Source: Mustelus asterias
Lineage: Eukaryota
Assembly: GCF_964213995.1 (NCBI RefSeq)
Contig: NW_027590140.1
Span: 1-64,000 of the forward strand
Direction: 5' to 3'
DNA: 64,000 nt
Part shown: positions 32,030 through 64,000 of the stretch, one piece after another
Numbering within the stretch: the first letter of the stretch is position 1
How the letters are laid out: the number at the start of each line of letters is the position of its first letter
The notes under the pieces: model-generated
What the model saw: only the letters and a program-made list of their open reading frames with translations
Databases searched by the model: none
What the model was told of the DNA's origin: nothing
Program-made: the position numbers and the translations under genes

Positions 32030-32960
32030 TTCGTGGCTGAGCATTTGTTTAAGTTCGATATTCCCGCCTGCTTCCCTTCGTTGCTGGACAGAAGAAATCT
32101 GTCTATCGCACAATGAAATGTGTTCAATGATGGAGCATCCAGAACCTTCTGGAAGAGAAAATGCCAACGATTCCCAACATTTTGAGTGGAGTAATTTCTC
32201 GTCATCGCTTCTCAGCCTTTTGGCTAAGATCAAGTGCAGCATCGACATGCTGTACTTGGTTGAAGCCACAAGGTTACATTGTAGCTTCATTTGAAGCATT
32301 TTTTAAAAGCAGCATCTCGGCCTTTTGGCTGAGATGCAAATGAGATCAAGCCTTGGAGCAGGTGCAATGCCTACTCCAATCAGCTTGGATCCTATAGATC
32401 AAGTCCAAGATAGGAGGTGAGATCCCTGTCTTGTCAGCTTGGACCGGGTATGTATCACTTGCTGCGACACTGAATTGGACTTTGATTGGATTGAATTGGA
32501 TATATAACCAACAAAACTATTCTCCTCATCTCAGTCCTAAATGTCCTAAAGTCTTTGTCCCTTATCCTGAGACTGTGTCCCATATTTTAAATCATTTGAG
32601 AATGCGAATGACATCTCAGAATGCATCCGATTTATTCCATTCATTCTTGTGTATGTTTCAATGAGATAGTATATCATTTTGCTGAACTCCAGAGAAATTG
32701 AGCCCAATTTACCCGATCTCGCATGATAGGACAACCCCTTCATCTCAGAGAATAGCCCAGTGAAGTTTTGTTGTACTGTCTCCATTAGATGCACATCCTG
32801 TCTTAAATGTAAAACACCAAAAATGCACACAATATTCCAAATGAGGGATTGGCAATACCCGGAGCAAATGCAGCAAGGCTTCAAAGGTTACGAAACTTGA
32901 CTCCGTACAAAAGACTGAAAGGAGAGCGTGACTGCGAATAATTGGCACTGTGCAACTTCC
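32030..32960 (-). mobile_element. Decayed CR1 3' end interrupted by the U2-headed element
   Basis: PHLEYCVHFW and METVQQNFTGL..MKGLSY peptides. The host sequence resumes at 32520. Confidence 0.75.
32204..32519 (+). mobile_element. U2 snRNA-headed SINE-like retroposed element
   Basis: U2 nt 1-40 at 32204-32243 (37/40 identical); second U2 head at 32312-32335; two hairpin units; (TGAAT/TGGAT) repeats; A-rich tail; flanking direct repeat ttctc(g/c)tcatc at 32196-32206 and 32520-32530. Confidence 0.7.
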
Positions 32961-37459: not shown

Positions 37460-40400
37460 ATATATTTAACTCGCTGTAGTGATAGCGAGTTGAGGAACAG
37501 GGAGCGAGTGCAGTTAAACATGTGGTTGCAGGGATGGTGTAGGAGGGAAGGTTTCAGATACGTGGATAATTGGAACACATTCTGGGGAAGGTGGGACCTG
37601 TACAAACAGGACGGGGTGCACCTGAACGAGAGGGGCACCAATATCCTCGGAGGGAAATTTGATAAGGCTCTTCAGGGGGGTTTAAACTAATTTGTCAGGG
37701 TAGTGGGAAAAGGAGTTGTAATCCAGAAGTCAGTGTTGAGGGTGGCGAGGTATTGGGGAAGGTATCAAGGTCAAGGGTGGGTACCGGTAGCAGGAAGGTG
37801 GGTTGAAGTGTGTCTACTTCAATGCAAGGAGCATCCGGAACAAGGTAGATGAACTTGCGGCGTGGATTGGTACTTGGGACTACGATGTTGTGGCCATTGC
37901 GGAGACGTGGGTAGCACAAGGACAGGAATGGTTGTTGAATGTTCTGGGGTATATATGTTTCAGTAAGTGTAGGGAAGCTGGCAAAAGAGGTGGAGGAGTA
38001 GCATTGTTAATCAAGGATAGTTTAACGGCTGCGGAAAGGCACTTCGAGGGGGATCTGCACACTGAGGTAATATGGGCTGAGCTTAGAAATAGGAAAGGAG
38101 GGGTCACGTTGTTAGGAGTTTACTATAGGTCCCCAAATAGTAATAGAGATGTGGAGGAAGAAATTGCTAAGCAGATTATGGATATGTGTGGGGGTCACAG
38201 GGTAGTTGTCATGGGGGACTTTAACTTTTCAAATATTGATTGGAACCTTTGTAGGTCAAATAGTTCGGATGGGGCAGTTTTCGTGCAGTGTGTGCAGGAG
38301 GGTTTCCTGACACAATATGTGGATAGGCCGACAAGAGGTGAGGCCACATTGGATTTGGTACTGGGAACTGAACCGGGCCAAGTGTTAGATTTGGTTGTGG
38401 GAGAACACTTTGGAGATAGTGACCACAATTCGGTGTCTGTTGTTATTGCAATGGAGAGGGATAGGGCCGCACGGCAGGGCAAGGTTTACAATTGGGGGAG
38501 AGGTAATTATGATGCGATGAGGCAAGAATTAGGGGGCATAAGATGGGAACAGAAACTGTCAGGGAAAGGCACTAATGAAAAGTGGAACTTTTTCAAGGAA
38601 CAAATACTGGGTGTCCTTGATGTATGTCCCTGTCAGGCAGGGAGGAAATGGCTGTGTGAGGGAACCATGGTTCACGAAAGAGGTGGAATATCTTGTGAAA
38701 AGGAAGAGGGAAGCTTATGTAGGGATGAGGAAACAAGGTTCAGATGGCTCGATTGAGGGTTACAAGTTAGCAAGGAATGAGCTGAAAAAGGGGCATAGGA
38801 GAGCTAGGAGTGGACATGAGAAGTCCTTGGCGGGTCGGATCAAGGAAAACCCCAAGGCTTTTTACTCTTATGTGAGGAATAAAAGAATGACCAGGGTGAG
38901 GTTAGGGCCGGTCAAGGACAGTAGTGGGAACTTGTGTATGGAGTCAGTAGAGATAGGCGAGGTGATGAATGAATACTTTTCTTCAGTGTTCACCAAGGAC
39001 AGGGGCCATGTTTTTGAGGAAGAGAAGGTGTTACAGGCTAATAGGCTGGAGGAAATAGATGTTCGGAGGGAGGATGTCCTGGCAGTTCTGAATAAACTGA
39101 ATGTCGATAATGCCCTGGGCCTGATGAAATATATCCTAGGATTCGTTGGGAGGCAAGTGATGAGATTGCATAGCCTTTGGCTTTGATCTTTGGGTCCTCG
39201 CTGTCCACGGGGATAGCGCCCGAGGACTGGAGAGTGGCGAATGTTGTTCCTCTGTTTAAGAAAGGGAATAGAAATGACCCTGGTAATTATAGACCGTTTA
39301 GTCTTACTTCGGTGGTTGGTAAATTGATGGAAAAGGTCCTTAGGGATGGGAATACGACCATTTAGAAAGATGCGGATTAATCCGGGATAGTCTGCACGGA
39401 TTCGTGAAGGGCAAGTCGTGCCTCACAAATTTGATTGAATTCTTTGAGGAGGTAACTAAGTGTGTTGATGAAGGTAGGGCGGTTCATGTCATATACATGG
39501 ATTTTAGTAAGGCGTTTGATAAGGTCCCCCATGGTCGGCTTATGATGAAAGTGAGGAGGTGTGGGATAGAGGGAAAGTTGGCCGATTGGATAGGTAACTG
39601 GCTATCTGATCGAAGACAGAGGGTGGTGGTGGATGGAAAATCTTCGGACTGGAGGCAGGTTGCTAGTGGAGTGCCACAGGGATCAGTGCTTGGTCCTCTG
39701 CTCTTTGTGATTTTTATTAATGACTTAGAGGAGGGGGCTGAAGGGTGGATCAGTAAATTTGCTGATGACACCAAGATAGGGGGAGTAGTGGATGAGGTAG
39801 AGGGCTGTTGTCGGCGGCAAAGAGACATAGATAGGATGCAAAGCTGGGCTGAAAAATGGCAAATGGAGTTCAACCCTGATAAATGTGAGGTGATTCATTT
39901 TGGTAGGACTAATTTAAATGTGGCTTGCAGGGTCAAAGGTAGGGTTCTGAAGACTGTGGAGGAACAGAGAGATCTTGGTGTCCATATCCACAGATCTCTA
40001 AAGGTTGCCACTCAAGCGGATAGAGCTGTGAAGAAGGCCTATAGTGTGTTAGCTTTTATTAACAGGGGGTTGGAGTTTAAGAGCCATGGGGCTCTGCTGC
40101 AAATGTACAGGACCTTGGTGAGACCACATTTGGAATATTGTGTGCAGTTCTGGTCACCTCACTATAAGAAGGATGTGGAAGCGCTGGAAAGAGTGCAGAG
40201 GAGTTTTACCAGGATGCGGCCTGGTTTGGAGGGTAGGTGTTATGAGGAAAGGTTGCGGGAGCTAGGGCTGTTCTCTCTGGAGCGGAGGAGGCTGAGGGGA
40301 GACTTAATAGAGGTTTATAAAATGATGAAGGGGATAGATAGAGTGAATGTTCAAAGACAATTTCCTCGGTTGGATGGAACTATTACAAGTGGGCATAACT

Positions 40401-40656
40401 ATAGGGTTCGTGGTGGGAAATAGGAAGGATATCAGAGGTAGGTTCTTTACGCAGAGAGTGGTTGGGGTGTGGAATGGACTGCCTGCAGTGATAGTGGAGT
40501 CAGACACTTTAGGAACATTTACGCGGTTATTGGATAGGCACATGGAGCACACAAGGATGATAGGGAGTGGGATAGCTTGATCTTGGTTTCTGATAAAGCT
40601 CGGCACAACATCGTGGGCCGAAGGGCCTATTCTGTGCTGTACTGTTCTATGTTCTA
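37460..40656 (+). mobile_element. Near-complete CR1 LINE: ORF1 esterase C-terminus plus frameshifted ORF2 (APE-RT)
   Basis: ORF1 WCRREGFRY..DLYKQDGVHLN (SGNH DxxH). ORF2 YFNARSI..AIAETW..GDFN..SDHN, FADDTKIGG, RPHLEYCVQFWSP. (TTCTATG)n tail; 12-bp duplication tgttctataact at 37448-37459 and 40657-40668. Confidence 0.95.
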
Positions 40657-40889
40657 TGTTCTATAACTCTCCCCAACGCCCCACCATGAACTGAGTAAAT
40701 CCTGCCGTGGTTCGATCTACCAAAATGCATCACCTCACATTTATCTGAAGTAAATTCCATCTGCCAGTCGTCAGGCCACTGGCCCAATTGATCAAAATCC
40801 CTTTGCAGTCCTTGAAACCGTTCTTTACAGTCCACTATGCCACCTATCTAGATGTCATCTGCAAACTTACAAACTGTGCCTCCTAAATT

Positions 40890-41055
40890 GGCGGGAGTAA
40901 CTATGACTCTCTTAGAAGGGTCTCACTAGAGAGTCATCTCTGGGTAGTTACCTCTGTGAATGTTATTGGCGTGTTTTGGCATTCACAGTGAAGTTGTGCC
41001 TCCTCGCGGCCCCGTCGGTAACCTTGGTGGCTTGCCACCAAGGGCTAAACAACTT
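40890..41055 (+). ncRNA. HDV-like self-cleaving ribozyme of an R2-type retrotransposon 5' end, including 28S rRNA target-site sequence
   Basis: P1 GGCGGG 40890-95 / CCCGUC 41011-16; P2 AAGUUGU 40991-97 / ACAACUU 41049-55; P3 GCC/GGC with L3 UCCUCGC; P1.1 GG 41017-18; P4 9 bp with CUUG loop, 41022-43; J4/2 GCUAA with the catalytic-position C at 41045. 40890-40914 equals the 28S sequence GGCGGGAGTAACTATGACTCTCTTA. Confidence 0.92.
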
Positions 41056-41863
41056 TGTTAAAAACAACGCAGAGACCGTAGATAGATAGTCCACAGAGAG
41101 ATTTGTGCGATTTGATATAGGCGGTTAGCGAAATGAATAATATTCCCGAAAAGGGGGAATCCGGATGGGTTGGGTCCCGGTTAAATAACAGCCCCCCAGA
41201 TGAGTCTGTAGCCGCTCTCTGGGAAAAATTCAAAAAGTTAGGCTATACTAGAACTAGCCCTAAGAAGCTAGAGACAAGTTCCGTCTCCACTCAAACAGAA
41301 GAGACGGTCTTGAGACCCGAGTTAAACTATCGGCACTATTGGGTGGTATATTCTGGTCCCAGTCCAGGTAAGGTAGCTACCCCAGTAGTTGAGGACATTG
41401 AACCTATTGTAGAGGAGCCCGTTCGGACGGCCATCCAACGGATGACGTAGTTGAGTTAACTACAGTTACCTTCTATAATAAGGCCTATAAAGCCCAGAAT
41501 ATGGGTTTGGGAAGCTTAGAAATAAGCAAAAATACCGTAAGCGATGTTGGTACTTCTGGTACCTTCATCGAGACTGTTAGCATAGAGCCAACTCAGGACC
41601 GAACTAAGGGTAGTATAGTTAATAGTTTTTAATTTTTCAGTCTTGATTCGGCCTATTCTATCAGTCCTGAGGTGGTGGAGTTTCGTGCACTGGGTACCAA
41701 CAACTTGGCTCGGTAGCCCCAATTAGATCTTGGGAGGGTAGTACCCCTGATTTGACCTTATAATCTGGCCTCAGTTTAGATTAGTAGTCCCTTGACTGTG
41801 AATTCGCTAGAGGTAGACAAACACGTCGACGAGCGACGTAAAGACTCGAACATGGCACTCATT

Positions 41864-42089
41864 NNNNNNNNNNNNNNNNNNNNNNNNNNNNNNNNNNNNN
41901 NNNNNNNNNNNNNNNNNNNNNNNNNNNNNNNNNNNNNNNNNNNNNNNNNNNNNNNNNNNNNNNNNNNNNNNNNNNNNNNNNNNNNNNNNNNNNNNNNNNN
42001 NNNNNNNNNNNNNNNNNNNNNNNNNNNNNNNNNNNNNNNNNNNNNNNNNNNNNNNNNNNNNNNNNNNNNNNNNNNNNNNNNNNNNNNNN
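41864..42089. other. Assembly gap (226 N)
   Basis: Run of N. Confidence 1.
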
Positions 42090-43559
42090 AAATACCAAAT
42101 CACGAACATAAATGACAAAAACGGTGGACCCAACACCGATCCCTGAGACAAACCGCTGGTCACAGGCCTCCGGGTTTGAAAAACAACTTTTGGCACCACC
42201 CTTTGTGTTCTGTCATCAAGCCAATTTTGTACCTATTTGTCATCTCACCCTGGATTCCGTGAGAATGAACCTTATGCAACAACCTATCATGTGATACCTT
42301 GTCGAAGCCCTTGCAAAAGCCCATGTAGTCAATATCAACTGCATTGCTCATGTACCTTCTTGGTTACCCCTTCAAAAAACTGCATTTAATTTGTGAGAAA
42401 TGATGTTCCACTCACAATGCCATGCTGACTCTCCCTAATCAGTCCTTGCCTCTCTAAATGCCTATCGATCCTGTCTCTCAGAATGCCTTCTAAAAACTTA
42501 CCCACTACAGATATGAGGCTCATCTCCCTGTAGTTTCCAGGCTTTTCCGTGCAGCCCATTTTAATCAAATACACAACATTTGCCACCCTCCAGTCTTCAG
42601 GCACCTCACTGTGGCTGGCCATGATTCAAATATCTCTGCCAGGGGAAAGTCAATTTCCTCTTTCGCCTCTCCCCCCCCCCCCCCCCGCCTCCCACAACGT
42701 CCTGTTATACACTTCATCAGGTCCCTGGGATGTATCTAGCTTGATGCACTTTAAGACATCCAGCACCTCCGTCTCTGTTACACGCCTCAAGACATCACTA
42801 TTTATTTCCCTAAGTTCCCGAACATTTTTTGCCTTTTACAAAACTAAATACCGATAAGAAATATTCATTTATCATTTCACCCTTCTCTTGTGGATCCGCA
42901 CATAAATTGCCTTGTTGATTCTTAATAGGTCCTACTCTCTCCCCTAGTTACTCTTTTACCCTTCATACATTTGTAGAAACTCTTTTGATTCTGCTTTGCC
43001 TTATCTGCCAAAACATTCTCGTGTCCTCTTTTTGCTCTCCTGAATCCTCTTATCTCTGCTTCTACACCCTCTATATTCTTCAAGGATGCATTTGATCCCA
43101 GCTGCCGGTGTATGACATTTATCTCATTCTTCTTCTTGACCAGGGCCTCAATATCCCCAGTTATCCAGCGTTCCCTCGTTCTACCAGCCTTGCCCATCAC
43201 GGTAAGAGGAATGTGCTTGTCCTGATACCTGGTTAACAGACTGTTGAAAGCCTCCCACTTACCAGACGCCTTTGCCTGCCAGCAAATTCCCCAATTAACT
43301 TTTGAAAGTTCCTGTCTGATAACATTAATATTGGCCTTGCCCCAATTTAGAATTTTAACTTTTGGGCCAGACCTATTGTTCTCCATAGCTATCTTAAAAC
43401 TAATGGAATTATGGTCACTCGTCCCAAAGTGATCCCTCACTCTCCTTGTGTCACCTGCTCTTCCTTATTTCCCAAGAGGAGATCAAGTTTCTCCCGCTCT
43501 CTCGTCGGAACATTGACATTCTGAAAGAGAAGTTCCTCCTGAATAAACTCGAAATTAAG

Positions 43560-44920: not shown

Positions 44921-44992
44921 GGGTCTATGTTGTAATGGTGAGCACTCTGGACTCTGAATCCAGTGATCCGAGCTCAAATCTCGATGGAACCT
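44921..44992 (+). tRNA. tRNA-Gln(CTG), probably a pseudogene
   Basis: Anticodon arm ctgga-ctCTGaa-tccag is intact, but there are G3:A70 and C49:A65 mismatches, G10>T and T54>C in the B box. Confidence 0.75.
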
Positions 44993-46179: not shown

Positions 46180-46251
46180 GGTTCTGTGTTGTAATGGCCA
46201 GAACTCTGGACTCTGAATCCAGCGATCCAAGTTTAGATCTTGGTGGGATCT
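46180..46251 (+). tRNA. tRNA-Gln(CTG), probably a pseudogene
   Basis: Intact anticodon arm; the T loop TTTAGAT lacks C56, the D arm is mutated and the acceptor stem has many GU pairs. Confidence 0.7.
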
Positions 46252-52939: not shown

Positions 52940-53330
52940 CTTTCCGTCCGTTCATTCCTCCGTCCGTCCTTCTCCCTCTCCCCATCCATCCATCCATCCG
53001 TCCGTTGGCCCGTCCATCCGCCCATCCATTCATCCNNNNNNNNNNNNNNNNNNNNNNNNNNNNNNNNNNNNNNNNNNNNNNNNNNNNNNNNNNNNNNNNN
53101 NNNNNNNNNNNNNNNNNNNNNNNNNNNNNNNNNNNNNNNNNNNNNNNNNNNNNNNNNNNNNNNNNNNNNNNNNNNNNNNNNNNNNNNNNNNNNNNNNNNN
53201 NNNNNNNNNNNNNNNNNNNNNNNNNNNNNNNNNNNNNNNNNNNNNNNNNNNNNNNNNNNNNNNNNNNNNNNATCTATTCATCTCTCTCTCTCTTCTCTCT
53301 CTCTCTCTACCTCGTTATCTATCTATTTGT
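52940..53330. repeat. (CCAT)n and (CT)n microsatellites flanking an assembly gap (53036-53271)
   Basis: Direct inspection. Confidence 0.9.
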
Positions 53331-62819: not shown

Positions 62820-64000
62820 TCATAGAGTCATAGAGATTTGCAGCATGGAAAAAAGGCCCTTCGAAACAAATTGTCCATGCCGCCCATTTTTTTAAACCTC
62901 TAAGCTAATCCCACTTGCCCGCATTTGGCACATATCCCTCTATACCCATCGTACCCATGTAACTATCTACATGCTTTTTAAAAGGCAAAATTGTACCCGC
63001 CTCTACTACTACCTCTGGCAGCTTGTTCCAGACACCTACCATCCTCTGTGTGAAACAATTGCCCTTCTGAACACTTTTATATCTCTCCCCTCACACCTTA
63101 AACCTATGCCCTCTAGTTTAAAAAAAACACCTACCTTTGGGAAAAGATATTGACTATCTAGCTGATCTGTGCCCCTCATTTTATAGACCTCTATAAGATC
63201 ACCCCTCAGCCTCCTACGCTCCAGAGGAAAAAGTCCCAGTTTATCCAGCCTCTCCTTCTAACTCAATCCATCAAGTCCCGGTAGCATCCTCGTAAATCTT
63301 TTCTGCACTTCTTCTAGTTTAATAATATCCTTTCTATAATAGGGTGACCAGAATTGCACACAGTATTCCAAGTGTGGCCTGACCAATGTCTTGTACAACT
63401 TCAACAAGACATTCCAACTCCTGTATTCAATGTTGTGACCGATGAAACCATGCGTGCCAAATGTCTTCTTCACCACTCTGTCCACCTGTGACCCCACTTT
63501 CAAGGAGCTATGAACATGTACCCCAAGATCTCTCTGTAACTCTCCCCAACGCCCTACCATTAACTGAGTAAGTCCTGCCCTGGTTCAATCTACCTAAATG
63601 CATCACCTCGCATTTGTCTAAATTAAACTCCATCTGCCATTCATCAGCCCACTCGCCCAATTGATAAAGATCCCGTTGCAATTGGAGATAACTTTCTTCA
63701 CTGTCCACTATGCCACCAATCTAAGTGTCATCTGCAAACTTAGTAACCATGCCCCCTATATTCTCATCCAAATCATTAATATAAATGACAATAACAGTGG
63801 ACCCAGCACTGATCCTTGAGGCACACCGCTGGTCACATGCCTCCAGTTTGAAAAACAACTCTCTACAACCACCCTCTGGTTTCTGTCAATGAGCCAATTT
63901 TGTATCCATTTAGATACCTCACCCTAAATCCCGTGAGATTTAACCTTATGCAACAATCTGCCATGCGGTTCCTTGTCAAAGGCCCTGCTAAAGTCCGTGT
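62820..64000 (-). mobile_element. CR1 LINE 3' part (continues beyond the window)
   Basis: WADEWQMEFNLDKCEVMH, RPHLEYCVQFWSP, RFTRMLPGL; tail ctctatgactctatga. Confidence 0.93.

What the first reader, a model, noticed from the sequence alone, without database searches (positions are those of the whole stretch)
40890..41055. Intact HDV-like ribozyme beginning exactly with the 28S rRNA R2 target site, stranded far from rDNA
Seen: 40890-40914 is the conserved 28S sequence just upstream of the R2 insertion site, with no other rDNA around it. Every element of an HDV-type double pseudoknot pairs: P1 GGCGGG/CCCGUC, P2 AAGUUGU/ACAACUU (7/7), P3 GCC/GGC, L3 UCCUCGC, P1.1 CC:GG, a 9-bp P4 with a CUUG loop, and J4/2 GCUAA with C41045. 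J1/2 carries two extra hairpins. One pairs the rRNA-derived sequence with element sequence (GUAACUA/UAGUUAC; AUGACUCUCU/AGAGAGUCAU); the other is CUGUGAAUG/CAUUCACAG. Known: R2 retrotransposons are co-transcribed with 28S and free their 5' end with an HDV-like ribozyme, which in several lineages cuts about 28 nt upstream inside the rRNA. G40890 is that -28 position. Inference: a ribozyme-processed R2-type RNA was reverse transcribed to its exact 5' end and integrated off-target. This records the in vivo cleavage site of a shark R2 lineage and leaves a probably active ribozyme that would cut any plus-strand read-through transcript here.
Basis: partly seen in the sequence, partly recalled or inferred. 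Interest (0 to 1): 0.92.

Follow-up and report, generated by a model that had tools for sequence, protein, structure and literature searches.

The report
Shark R2 ribozyme on short stray copy
This is the self-cutting RNA motif at the front of a shortened R2 jumping gene that landed inside another repeat instead of in a ribosomal RNA gene, still carrying the 28 ribosomal letters that mark where the RNA cut itself free.

Summary
40890-40914 equals the 28S sequence from -28 to -4 of the R2 site as printed in two papers. It occurs once in the window and 0 times in 100 shuffles. A strict HDV-like descriptor hits only here, with 0 hits in 300 shuffled windows.

The ribozyme is not alone. It heads a roughly 1.2 kb insert, 40890 to about 42094, whose last 226 nt are masked. 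The insert interrupts an antisense LINE reverse-transcriptase region; an uninterrupted copy of that repeat lies at 63533-64000.

Downstream of the ribozyme are the first 160 codons of an R2 protein, in two frames. They are 59% identical to the N-terminus of a 1296-aa protein that matches solved R2 structures at E 3.5e-218. Zinc fingers, reverse transcriptase and endonuclease are absent. It is therefore an internally deleted, non-autonomous R2, like a Drosophila SIDE, lying outside rDNA.

An independent contig from another sample bridges the 5' junction.

Cutting at -28 is the commonest known R2 mode (PMC3774820), so this is a new member of a known kind. Cleavage activity and the 3' end are untested.

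Unchecked notes of this scan report similar 28S-headed copies on other pieces of the same genome.

The parts
40890..40919 (+). 28S-derived head: 28S positions -28 to -1 of the R2 site. The first 25 nt are exact; two extra letters lie within the last five.
40890..41055 (+). Complete HDV-like (R2-type) ribozyme. The predicted cut is 5' of G40890.
   Evidence: Descriptor scans, pair counts, fold, weak Rfam RF00094 alignment of the core at 40981-41057.
40890..40895 (+). P1 5' strand (GGCGGG), made of 28S sequence. It pairs with 41011-41016.
   Evidence: 6/6 pairs. PMC3774820 section 16 gives P1 as 6 or 7 bp.
40896..40990 (+). J1/2, 95 nt, with two hairpins. Hairpin a (40897-40912 with 40928-40951) pairs the 28S head with built-in antisense segments. 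Hairpin b is 40954-40962 with 40980-40988.
   Evidence: 10/10, 6/6 and 9/9. The MFE fold keeps both hairpins. The variant at 40928 seen in contigs keeps that pair as G-U.
40991..41010 (+). P2 5' strand (40991-40997), P3 (40998-41000 with 41008-41010) and L3 UCCUCGC (41001-41007).
   Evidence: L3 aligns to the Rfam consensus. 10 of 11 letters match the CCUCCUCGUGG motif quoted for fly and zebra finch R2 in PMC5035012.
41011..41018 (+). P1 3' strand (41011-41016) and the P1.1 GG (41017-41018), which pairs with C41002 and C41003.
41022..41043 (+). P4, 9 bp, with a CUUG loop.
41044..41055 (+). J4/2 GCUAA, with C41045 at the position of the catalytic cytosine, followed by the P2 3' strand (41049-41055).
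   Evidence: The Rfam alignment places GGCUAA on the consensus.
41133..41608 (+). Remnant of the R2 open reading frame, homologous to residues 1-160 of a full-length R2 protein (P0004). It lies in two frames, with the frame broken near 41430.
   Evidence: phmmer, cluster look-up, tblastn at 59-60% identity. P0004 matches solved R2 proteins at E 3.5e-218. No Pfam family reaches threshold for the 105-aa ORF.
41609..41863 (+). Visible part of the 3' region beyond the internal deletion. The deletion junction lies between 41608 and 41615. This stretch has no protein homology to R2.
   Evidence: tblastn stops at 41608. Contigs of three runs stop matching the window at 41614, and one contig bridges 41585-41721 (table 8). 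The stretch is not unusually structured: z +0.61.
41864..42089 (.). Masked run of N, 226 nt, inside the insert. It was neither read nor filled.
42090..42094 (+). Five letters after the mask that match none of the 5 host letters expected here. They are either the last letters of the insert or filler, and imply a small loss of target.
   Evidence: Alignment to the uninterrupted repeat copy.
40664..40889 (-). Host repeat, left flank: antisense LINE reverse-transcriptase coding region.
   Evidence: 83% identical to 63533-63762. tblastn of the window's own RT ORF hits 40880-40653 on the minus strand.
42095..42415 (-). Host repeat, right flank: the same antisense LINE copy resuming.
   Evidence: 80% identical to 63768-64000. 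tblastn of the RT ORF hits 42415-42095 on the minus strand.

Best explanation
The 166 nt are the 5' ribozyme of an R2 retrotransposon of the type that cuts 28 nt upstream, inside 28S rRNA. They form the front of a roughly 1.2 kb internally deleted, non-autonomous R2 copy, comparable to the SIDEs of Drosophila.

This copy keeps the 28S head, the ribozyme, the rest of the 5' UTR, the first 160 codons of the R2 protein and a 3' region of about 480 nt. It has lost the zinc fingers, Myb, reverse transcriptase and endonuclease.

Shown: the motif, the 28S head, the R2 protein homology, the deletion, and the position inside a LINE rather than in 28S.

Inferred mechanism:
1. An R2/28S co-transcript, or a read-through transcript of an earlier copy, folded. 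P1 was formed by 28S positions -28 to -23, and the RNA cut itself 5' of that G.
2. The processed RNA was reverse transcribed right to its 5' end.
3. The copy was joined into a nick in a LINE copy, most likely by R2 protein supplied in trans acting off target.

Because the head travels with the copy, the ribozyme here is self-contained. If it is active, it would trim any plus-strand read-through transcript back to G40890.
For: 28S head:
- It is exact for 25 nt and begins at -28.
- -28 is the commonest R2 cleavage site. P1 of 6-7 bp and a P1-to-P1' distance of 23 to over 700 nt are normal for R2 (PMC3774820 sections 15-17).

Motif:
- All helices are intact.
- It is unique in the window and absent from 300 shuffles.

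R2 origin of the body:
- 41133-41608 matches residues 1-160 of P0004.
- P0004 matches solved R2Tg and R2Bm proteins.
- There is no match beyond residue 160.

Clean insertion into a repeat:
- The uninterrupted copy aligns up to 40889 and again from 42095.
- The first inserted letter differs from the host's next letter, so the 5' boundary is unambiguous.

The junction is real:
- The 425-nt contig of run X2 covers 40772-41196, with 118 letters on the left of the junction and 307 on the right.

Possible relatives in the same species' runs:
- Contigs stop matching the window at 41614, as a full-length parent would (table 8).
- One contig joins 40914 to 41826, as a 5'-truncated copy in 28S would. 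This is weak: side 22 (table 5).

Precedents:
- R2 SIDEs (PMC3414825).
- R2 copies outside rDNA, and R1 copies outside rDNA that carry 28S heads (PMC2718515).
Against: - Self-cleavage was not tested.
- Rfam's HDV model scores 16.4 bits against a gathering score of 50.
- The pair at the cut site is G-C, not the G-U wobble of HDV. That comparison is recalled, not from a call.
- The long structured J1/2 could favour misfolding.
- The 3' end is masked, so no tail, no 3' UTR match and no target-site duplication can be seen.
- The visible 3' part is not unusually structured.
- The parent R2 and its presence in 28S were not read directly. Only contig coordinates point to them.
- No relatives were fetched, so there is no covariation test. 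The protein scan found none, and 0 of 120 pattern loci carry a 28S head.
- None of the 22 listed runs is on record as RNA.
- Who supplied the reverse transcriptase is unknown.
Confidence: 0.78

Rival explanations
1. This is not an accident but a lineage that has left the rDNA. The shark has an R2 family, autonomous copies plus this short derivative, with relaxed or lost 28S specificity. It keeps the 28S head only as a built-in half of P1, so each dispersed copy can be trimmed out of any host transcript.
For: - Unchecked notes of this scan list further 28S-headed, ribozyme-capped copies on other pieces of the same genome. Two have similar lengths (1201 and 1072 letters), and there is also a 4.9 kb R2-clade relic outside rDNA.
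- Several variant contigs, 5-10% diverged, cover the element.
- Non-target-specific R2 families exist in flatworms (PMC5035012).
- The head deviates from 28S by two letters, as expected if it is copied from element to element (PMC3774820 discussion).
Against: - I verified only one copy.
- The notes are AI leads, and several may describe the same locus.
- Element depth in the runs is low compared with the flanking LINEs.
- One contig suggests a copy joined to a 28S-like head, as in rDNA.
- No target-site pattern could be compared.
Confidence: 0.3
2. The ribozyme-processed R2 RNA was copied into the genome by another LINE's machinery, as a processed pseudogene, rather than by R2 protein.
For: - The window is full of LINE reverse-transcriptase copies.
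- The target is not 28S.
- The letters after the mask are A-rich.
Against: - No tail or target-site duplication can be seen because the 3' end is masked.
- The right flank shows a small loss of target rather than a duplication.
- Two other copies of similar length are noted (1201 and 1072 letters), which fits a defined 3' end recognised by its own partner (unchecked).
Confidence: 0.12
3. A piece of R2-inserted rDNA was moved here as DNA, by recombination or repair, with no RNA step.
For: - The 3' end is unreadable, so 28S sequence on that side cannot be excluded.
- Displaced rDNA fragments are known (PMC2718515).
Against: - The left boundary falls exactly on the first base of P1, at -28, with no further 28S upstream.
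- The host repeat is otherwise continuous, with only 5 letters replaced.
- The internal deletion and the similar lengths noted for two other copies (1201 and 1072 letters) fit a transposing unit.
Confidence: 0.05
4. Chance resemblance or an assembly chimera.
For: The Rfam score is below threshold.
Against: - 0 hits in 300 shuffles for the strict descriptor.
- 0 of 100 shuffles contain the 25-mer.
- R2 protein homology lies directly downstream.
- A contig from another sample bridges the junction.
Confidence: 0.01

Closest known systems
R2 HDV-like ribozymes that cut at -28 in 28S (earwig, Nasonia giraulti, silkmoth and Tribolium A tested; zebra finch predicted): PMC3774820, PMC11331408
   Same: - P1 is made of 28S positions -28 onward.
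- P1' lies directly after P3/L3.
- The L3 and J4/2 letters are conserved.
- J1/2 is long and holds the rest of the 28S head.
- The cut leaves 28 nt of rRNA on the element RNA.
   Different: - This one is found outside 28S, so the head is part of the DNA copy.
- J1/2 contains antisense segments that pair with the head.
- Activity is untested.
R2Dwi_SIDE, the short internally deleted R2 of Drosophila willistoni (PMC3414825)
   Same: - The 5' ribozyme is kept and the coding body is deleted.
- The element is short: 529 bp there, about 1.2 kb here.
- It presumably depends on R2 protein supplied in trans.
   Different: - The fly SIDE sits in the 28S R2 site and cuts at the element boundary.
- This one lies in a LINE, cuts at -28 and still holds 160 codons of the ORF.
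- Its 3' end could not be compared.
R2 and R1 copies outside the rDNA in Drosophila (PMC2718515)
   Same: - R2 copies not inserted in 28S occur in 5 of the 8 species for which that passage gives a result.
- Full-length melanogaster-type R1 copies outside rDNA carry 7-28 bp of upstream 28S at the 5' end.
   Different: - Those R2 ribozymes cut at the junction, so no 28S head is expected on them.
- Here the length of the head equals the ribozyme's cut position.
Tandem 13-28 nt duplications of 28S at R2 5' junctions (PMC3774820, Figure 5 legend and discussion)
   Same: They are a genomic record that cDNA reached the ribozyme-cut 5' end and was joined without annealing to the target.
   Different: Those are inside 28S. 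This one is at an unrelated target.
R2NS families without target specificity in flatworms (PMC5035012)
   Same: They are R2-clade elements dispersed outside rDNA.
   Different: - They are autonomous families in invertebrates.
- Whether they carry 28S heads could not be checked, because the supplement was closed.

Membership tests
HDV-like self-cleaving ribozyme | Nested double pseudoknot in the order P1, P2, P3, L3, P3', P1', P1.1, P4, J4/2, P2' | tested here: met
   Pair counts. Unique descriptor hit.
HDV-like self-cleaving ribozyme | Catalytic cytosine in J4/2 and conserved L3 letters | tested here: met
   C41045 lies in GCUAA, and L3 is UCCUCGC. Both align to the Rfam consensus. 10 of 11 letters match the R2 motif quoted in PMC5035012.
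HDV-like self-cleaving ribozyme | Reaches the gathering score of an Rfam HDV-type model | tested here: not met
   RF00094 scores 16.4 bits against 50, E 8.6, and there is nothing at gathering threshold. No Rfam family named for R2 appeared in either scan. I attribute the low score partly to the 95-nt J1/2, which that model cannot span; that is my reading.
HDV-like self-cleaving ribozyme | Self-cleavage 5' of the first P1 base | not testable with these tools
   This needs an in vitro transcription and cleavage assay. The only indirect support is that the DNA copy starts at that base.
HDV-like self-cleaving ribozyme | Helices supported by compensatory changes among relatives | tested here: inconclusive
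   No relatives could be fetched. The only variant listed inside the motif, at 40928, keeps its pair as G-U.
R2 retrotransposon | 5' end joined to 28S sequence upstream of the R2 site | tested here: met
   The 28S head covers -28 to -1.
R2 retrotransposon | Encodes an R2 protein (zinc fingers, Myb, reverse transcriptase, restriction-like endonuclease) | tested here: not met
   Only residues 1-160 of the R2 homologue P0004 are matched, and the frame is broken. The copy is therefore not autonomous.
R2 retrotransposon | Inserted at the R2 site of a 28S gene | tested here: not met
   The host is an antisense LINE RT region. There is no rRNA model hit in the window.
[quoted passage not shown] | R2 5' ribozyme kept and coding body deleted | tested here: met
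[quoted passage not shown] | 3' end of the parent R2 kept for recognition by R2 protein | tested here: inconclusive
   The last 226 nt are masked. The parent was not read. Contig break points at 41614 and the joint 40914 to 41826 are only suggestive. There is no excess structure.
[quoted passage not shown] | Several copies with junction variation that show propagation | tested here: inconclusive
   Variant contigs exist. Other copies are known only from unchecked notes.

The most novel reading that the evidence does not exclude
A cartilaginous fish harbours a family of short R2 derivatives that multiply outside the rDNA. The 28-nt rRNA head has become a permanent, copied part of the element and supplies half of P1. 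Every dispersed copy therefore carries a complete ribozyme and can be released from any host transcript. This would be an R2 lineage caught escaping its 28S niche in a vertebrate.
Probability: 0.3. Interest if true: 0.72.

Novelty: new member of a known kind. Interest (0 to 1): 0.5.

Why it matters
R2 is the model site-specific retrotransposon and is now used for gene insertion.

- A natural off-target copy whose first base is the predicted -28 cut site is a genomic record of three things: the ribozyme cuts there in vivo in a vertebrate lineage, cDNA synthesis reaches the very 5' end, and joining can occur without 28S homology.
- It shows an internally deleted R2 outside insects. My two searches of the held library found short internally deleted R2 elements only for Drosophila.
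- It gives concrete loci for asking how often R2 machinery acts off target.

Tried and rejected
Steps that led nowhere:
- Rfam at gathering threshold found no ribozyme or rRNA. At E up to 10 there was only a weak HDV hit and a chance L19-leader hit.
- Pfam on the 105-aa ORF gave nothing significant: BcsQ at E 0.12.
- The metagenome scan with protein P0001 matched 205 pattern stretches, none confirmed.
- The metagenome scan with a degenerate L3/P1' pattern gave 120 loci, and 0 of 120 have the 28S head within 400 nt. I take them for chance matches.
- The search for homologous proteins with P0001 returned only P0001 itself.
- The fold of the visible 3' part gave z +0.61, with 147 of 200 shuffles as good.
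- The bacterial promoter and terminator scan is irrelevant here.
- The search of earlier findings by sequence was blank.
- I considered that the mask hides 28S-like sequence. The other mask in the window lies in a simple repeat, so nothing can be inferred, and I did not look.
- I considered a shared CCAAAT just 3' of both the 28S nick and this target. By my rough count p is about 0.01. It is untested, so I did not build on it.
- Copy number from contig depth could not be calibrated, because there was only one read-laying run.

Limits of the sources:
- Supplements were closed. Figure S2 of PMC3774820 (ribozyme structures, including vertebrates) and S1 Fig of PMC5035012 (flanks of non-specific R2) may bear on novelty.
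- Papers read: PMC3774820, abstract and sections 11, 12 and 14-16 in full, section 17 part 1 of 2. PMC3414825, abstract and section 5. Passages only of PMC5035012, PMC13188248, PMC2718515, PMC11331408, PMC4370867 and PMC13000458. All others were seen only as search listings.

Full report
**What is there**

The 25 nt at 40890-40914 are identical to the 28S consensus printed upstream of the R2 site in PMC4370867 Table 3. They also match the 28S target oligonucleotides of PMC13000458 Table 1. In both, the run beginning GGCGGG starts 28 nt before the R2 nick. In the window the head continues to 40919, with two extra letters inside its last five. With up to three mismatches the 25-mer occurs once in the window, and 0 of 100 shuffles contain it. 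No rRNA model hit lies anywhere in the 64 kb.

**The ribozyme**

A script counted every proposed helix:
- P1 40890-40895 with 41011-41016, 6/6
- P2 40991-40997 with 41049-41055, 7/7
- P3 3/3, with L3 UCCUCGC
- P1.1 2/2
- P4 9/9, with a CUUG loop
- J4/2 GCUAA, with C41045

J1/2 is 95 nt and holds two perfect hairpins. The first pairs 16 nt of the 28S head with antisense segments built into the element (10/10 and 6/6). The second has 9/9 pairs.

Chance was tested with my own descriptors:
- A relaxed HDV-like descriptor hits only this site in the window. It hit 6 times in 100 dinucleotide shuffles of the window, with 4 of 100 shuffles having any hit.
- A strict descriptor that also asks for a 7-bp P2 and a 6-bp P4 hits only here, and 0 times in 300 shuffles.
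- The nested part folds at -68.2 kcal/mol, z -4.08, with 0 of 200 shuffles as good.

Against this, Rfam's HDV model gives only 16.4 bits (E 8.6, gathering score 50), although it aligns L3 and GGCUAA to its consensus. No Rfam family named for R2 appeared in either scan.

**Comparison with known R2 ribozymes**

From PMC3774820 (sections 11, 12 and 14-16 in full, section 17 part 1 of 2):
- Many R2 ribozymes build P1 from 28S sequence.
- -28 is the most frequent cut site and occurs in divergent lineages, including zebra finch.
- P1 is typically 6 or 7 bp.
- P1 and P1' lie 23 to over 700 nt apart.
- Variation at the 28S/R2 junction is propagated when the cut lies upstream.

PMC5035012 quotes CCUCCUCGUGG as the most conserved R2 ribozyme stretch in fly and zebra finch. 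The window has 10 of these 11 letters. The motif is therefore a typical -28-type R2 ribozyme.

**What it belongs to**

The left flank 40660-40889 is 83% identical to 63533-63762. The right flank 42095-42326 is 80% identical to 63768-64000, in one uninterrupted copy. So an insert runs from 40890 to about 42094, roughly 1.2 kb. Its last 226 nt are masked, and I did not read or fill them. The five letters after the mask match none of the five host letters expected there.

The host is an antisense LINE reverse-transcriptase region. The window's own RT ORF aligns to 42415-42095 and to 40880-40653 on the minus strand. The host's next letter after the break differs from the insert's first letter, so the insert starts exactly at G40890.

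**The body is R2**

- The 105-aa ORF at 41133-41450 has no Pfam family.
- A search of 1.84 billion representative proteins found one clear relative, P0001 (152 aa, 59% identity, E 8.3e-26), and two repeat-like weak hits that I disregard.
- P0001's 90% cluster also holds P0004, 1296 aa.
- P0004 has an RVT_1 domain. It matches the solved R2 proteins R2Tg at E 3.5e-218 and R2Bm at E 4.6e-88.
- tblastn places P0004 residues 1-100 on 41133-41432 and residues 100-160 on 41429-41608, in a second frame. Nothing in the insert matches any later residue.

So the copy keeps the R2 5' end and 160 codons, with a broken frame. It lacks the zinc fingers, Myb, reverse transcriptase and endonuclease. This matches the idea of a short internally deleted element, described for Drosophila R2 in PMC3414825 (abstract and section 5).

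The visible 3' part, 41609-41863, has no protein homology and no unusual structure (z +0.61).

**Reads**

All 22 listed runs are kept as contigs, and none is on record as RNA. Four runs of organism A from two studies were laid on 40300-41850.
- One contig of run X2 (425 nt, another sample) covers 40772-41196. It bridges the 5' junction with 118 and 307 letters on either side and two letter differences.
- Element depth is far below that of the flanking LINEs.
- Diverged variant contigs exist, so there are several copies.
- Three contigs stop matching the window at 41614, and one bridges 41585-41721. This fits a full-length parent plus the deleted form.
- One weak joint (one contig, side 22) links 40914 to 41826. 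That is what a 5'-truncated copy in 28S would give.
- Contigs cannot show RNA ends or expression.

**Mechanism**

Shown: the motif, the head, the R2 homology, the deletion and the non-rDNA host.

Inferred: self-cleavage at -28 of a co-transcript, reverse transcription to the very 5' end, and joining at a nick in a LINE by R2 protein supplied in trans. The head now makes the ribozyme self-contained at this locus.

Rivals:
- A lineage that has truly left the rDNA (0.3). It rests mainly on unchecked notes of this scan that list further 28S-headed copies of 1201 and 1072 letters and a 4.9 kb relic elsewhere in the genome.
- Copying by another LINE's machinery (0.12).
- DNA-level relocation (0.05).
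- Chance or chimera (0.01).

**Novelty**

Already in print:
- The -28 ribozyme and SIDEs.
- R2 copies outside rDNA, and R1 copies outside rDNA with 28S heads (PMC2718515).
- Non-specific R2 families (PMC5035012).
- R2 in sharks (PMC13188248 and PMC5035012).

My searches for short internally deleted R2 elements returned only the Drosophila work. Supplements were closed.

I rate this a new member of a known kind. It has moderate interest as a natural record of the in vivo cut site and of off-target integration in a vertebrate.

Noticed in passing
window 32204-32395 (+): U2 snRNA-like sequence just above Rfam's gathering score (48.6 against 46 bits), with much of the middle of the model unaligned.
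   Followed up: no
window 44921-44992 and 46180-46251 (+): Two tRNA-like sequences, 42.8 and 33.0 bits, with near-identical anticodon arms, about 1.2 kb apart. They may be tRNA-derived repeats.
   Followed up: no
window 40897-40951: The element carries antisense copies of the 28S head, so the head is locked in a perfect 10+6 bp hairpin inside J1/2. This could help bring P1 and P2 together, or could hinder annealing of the cDNA to 28S.
   Followed up: partly
window 42095-42100, compared with the 28S target printed in PMC13000458: CCAAAT lies a few letters 3' of the break in the host LINE and also a few letters 3' of the R2 nick in 28S. It could be residual target recognition or microhomology, or coincidence (my rough p is about 0.01).
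   Followed up: no
window 53036-53271: The second masked run lies inside a CCAT/CCGT simple repeat, so masks in this window need not mark rRNA-like sequence.
   Followed up: partly
window 41133-41608 and protein P0004 residues 1-160: An N-terminal region of about 160 residues ahead of the zinc fingers is shared at 59% identity between this copy and a full-length R2 protein. It matches no Pfam family, and no solved R2 chain matched before residue 164.
   Followed up: partly
window 39404-40663 (+): A LINE copy with an intact 339-aa RT-containing ORF (RVT_1, E 1.9e-24) ends in a short ATGTTCT-type repeat directly beside the host repeat of the R2 insert.
   Followed up: no
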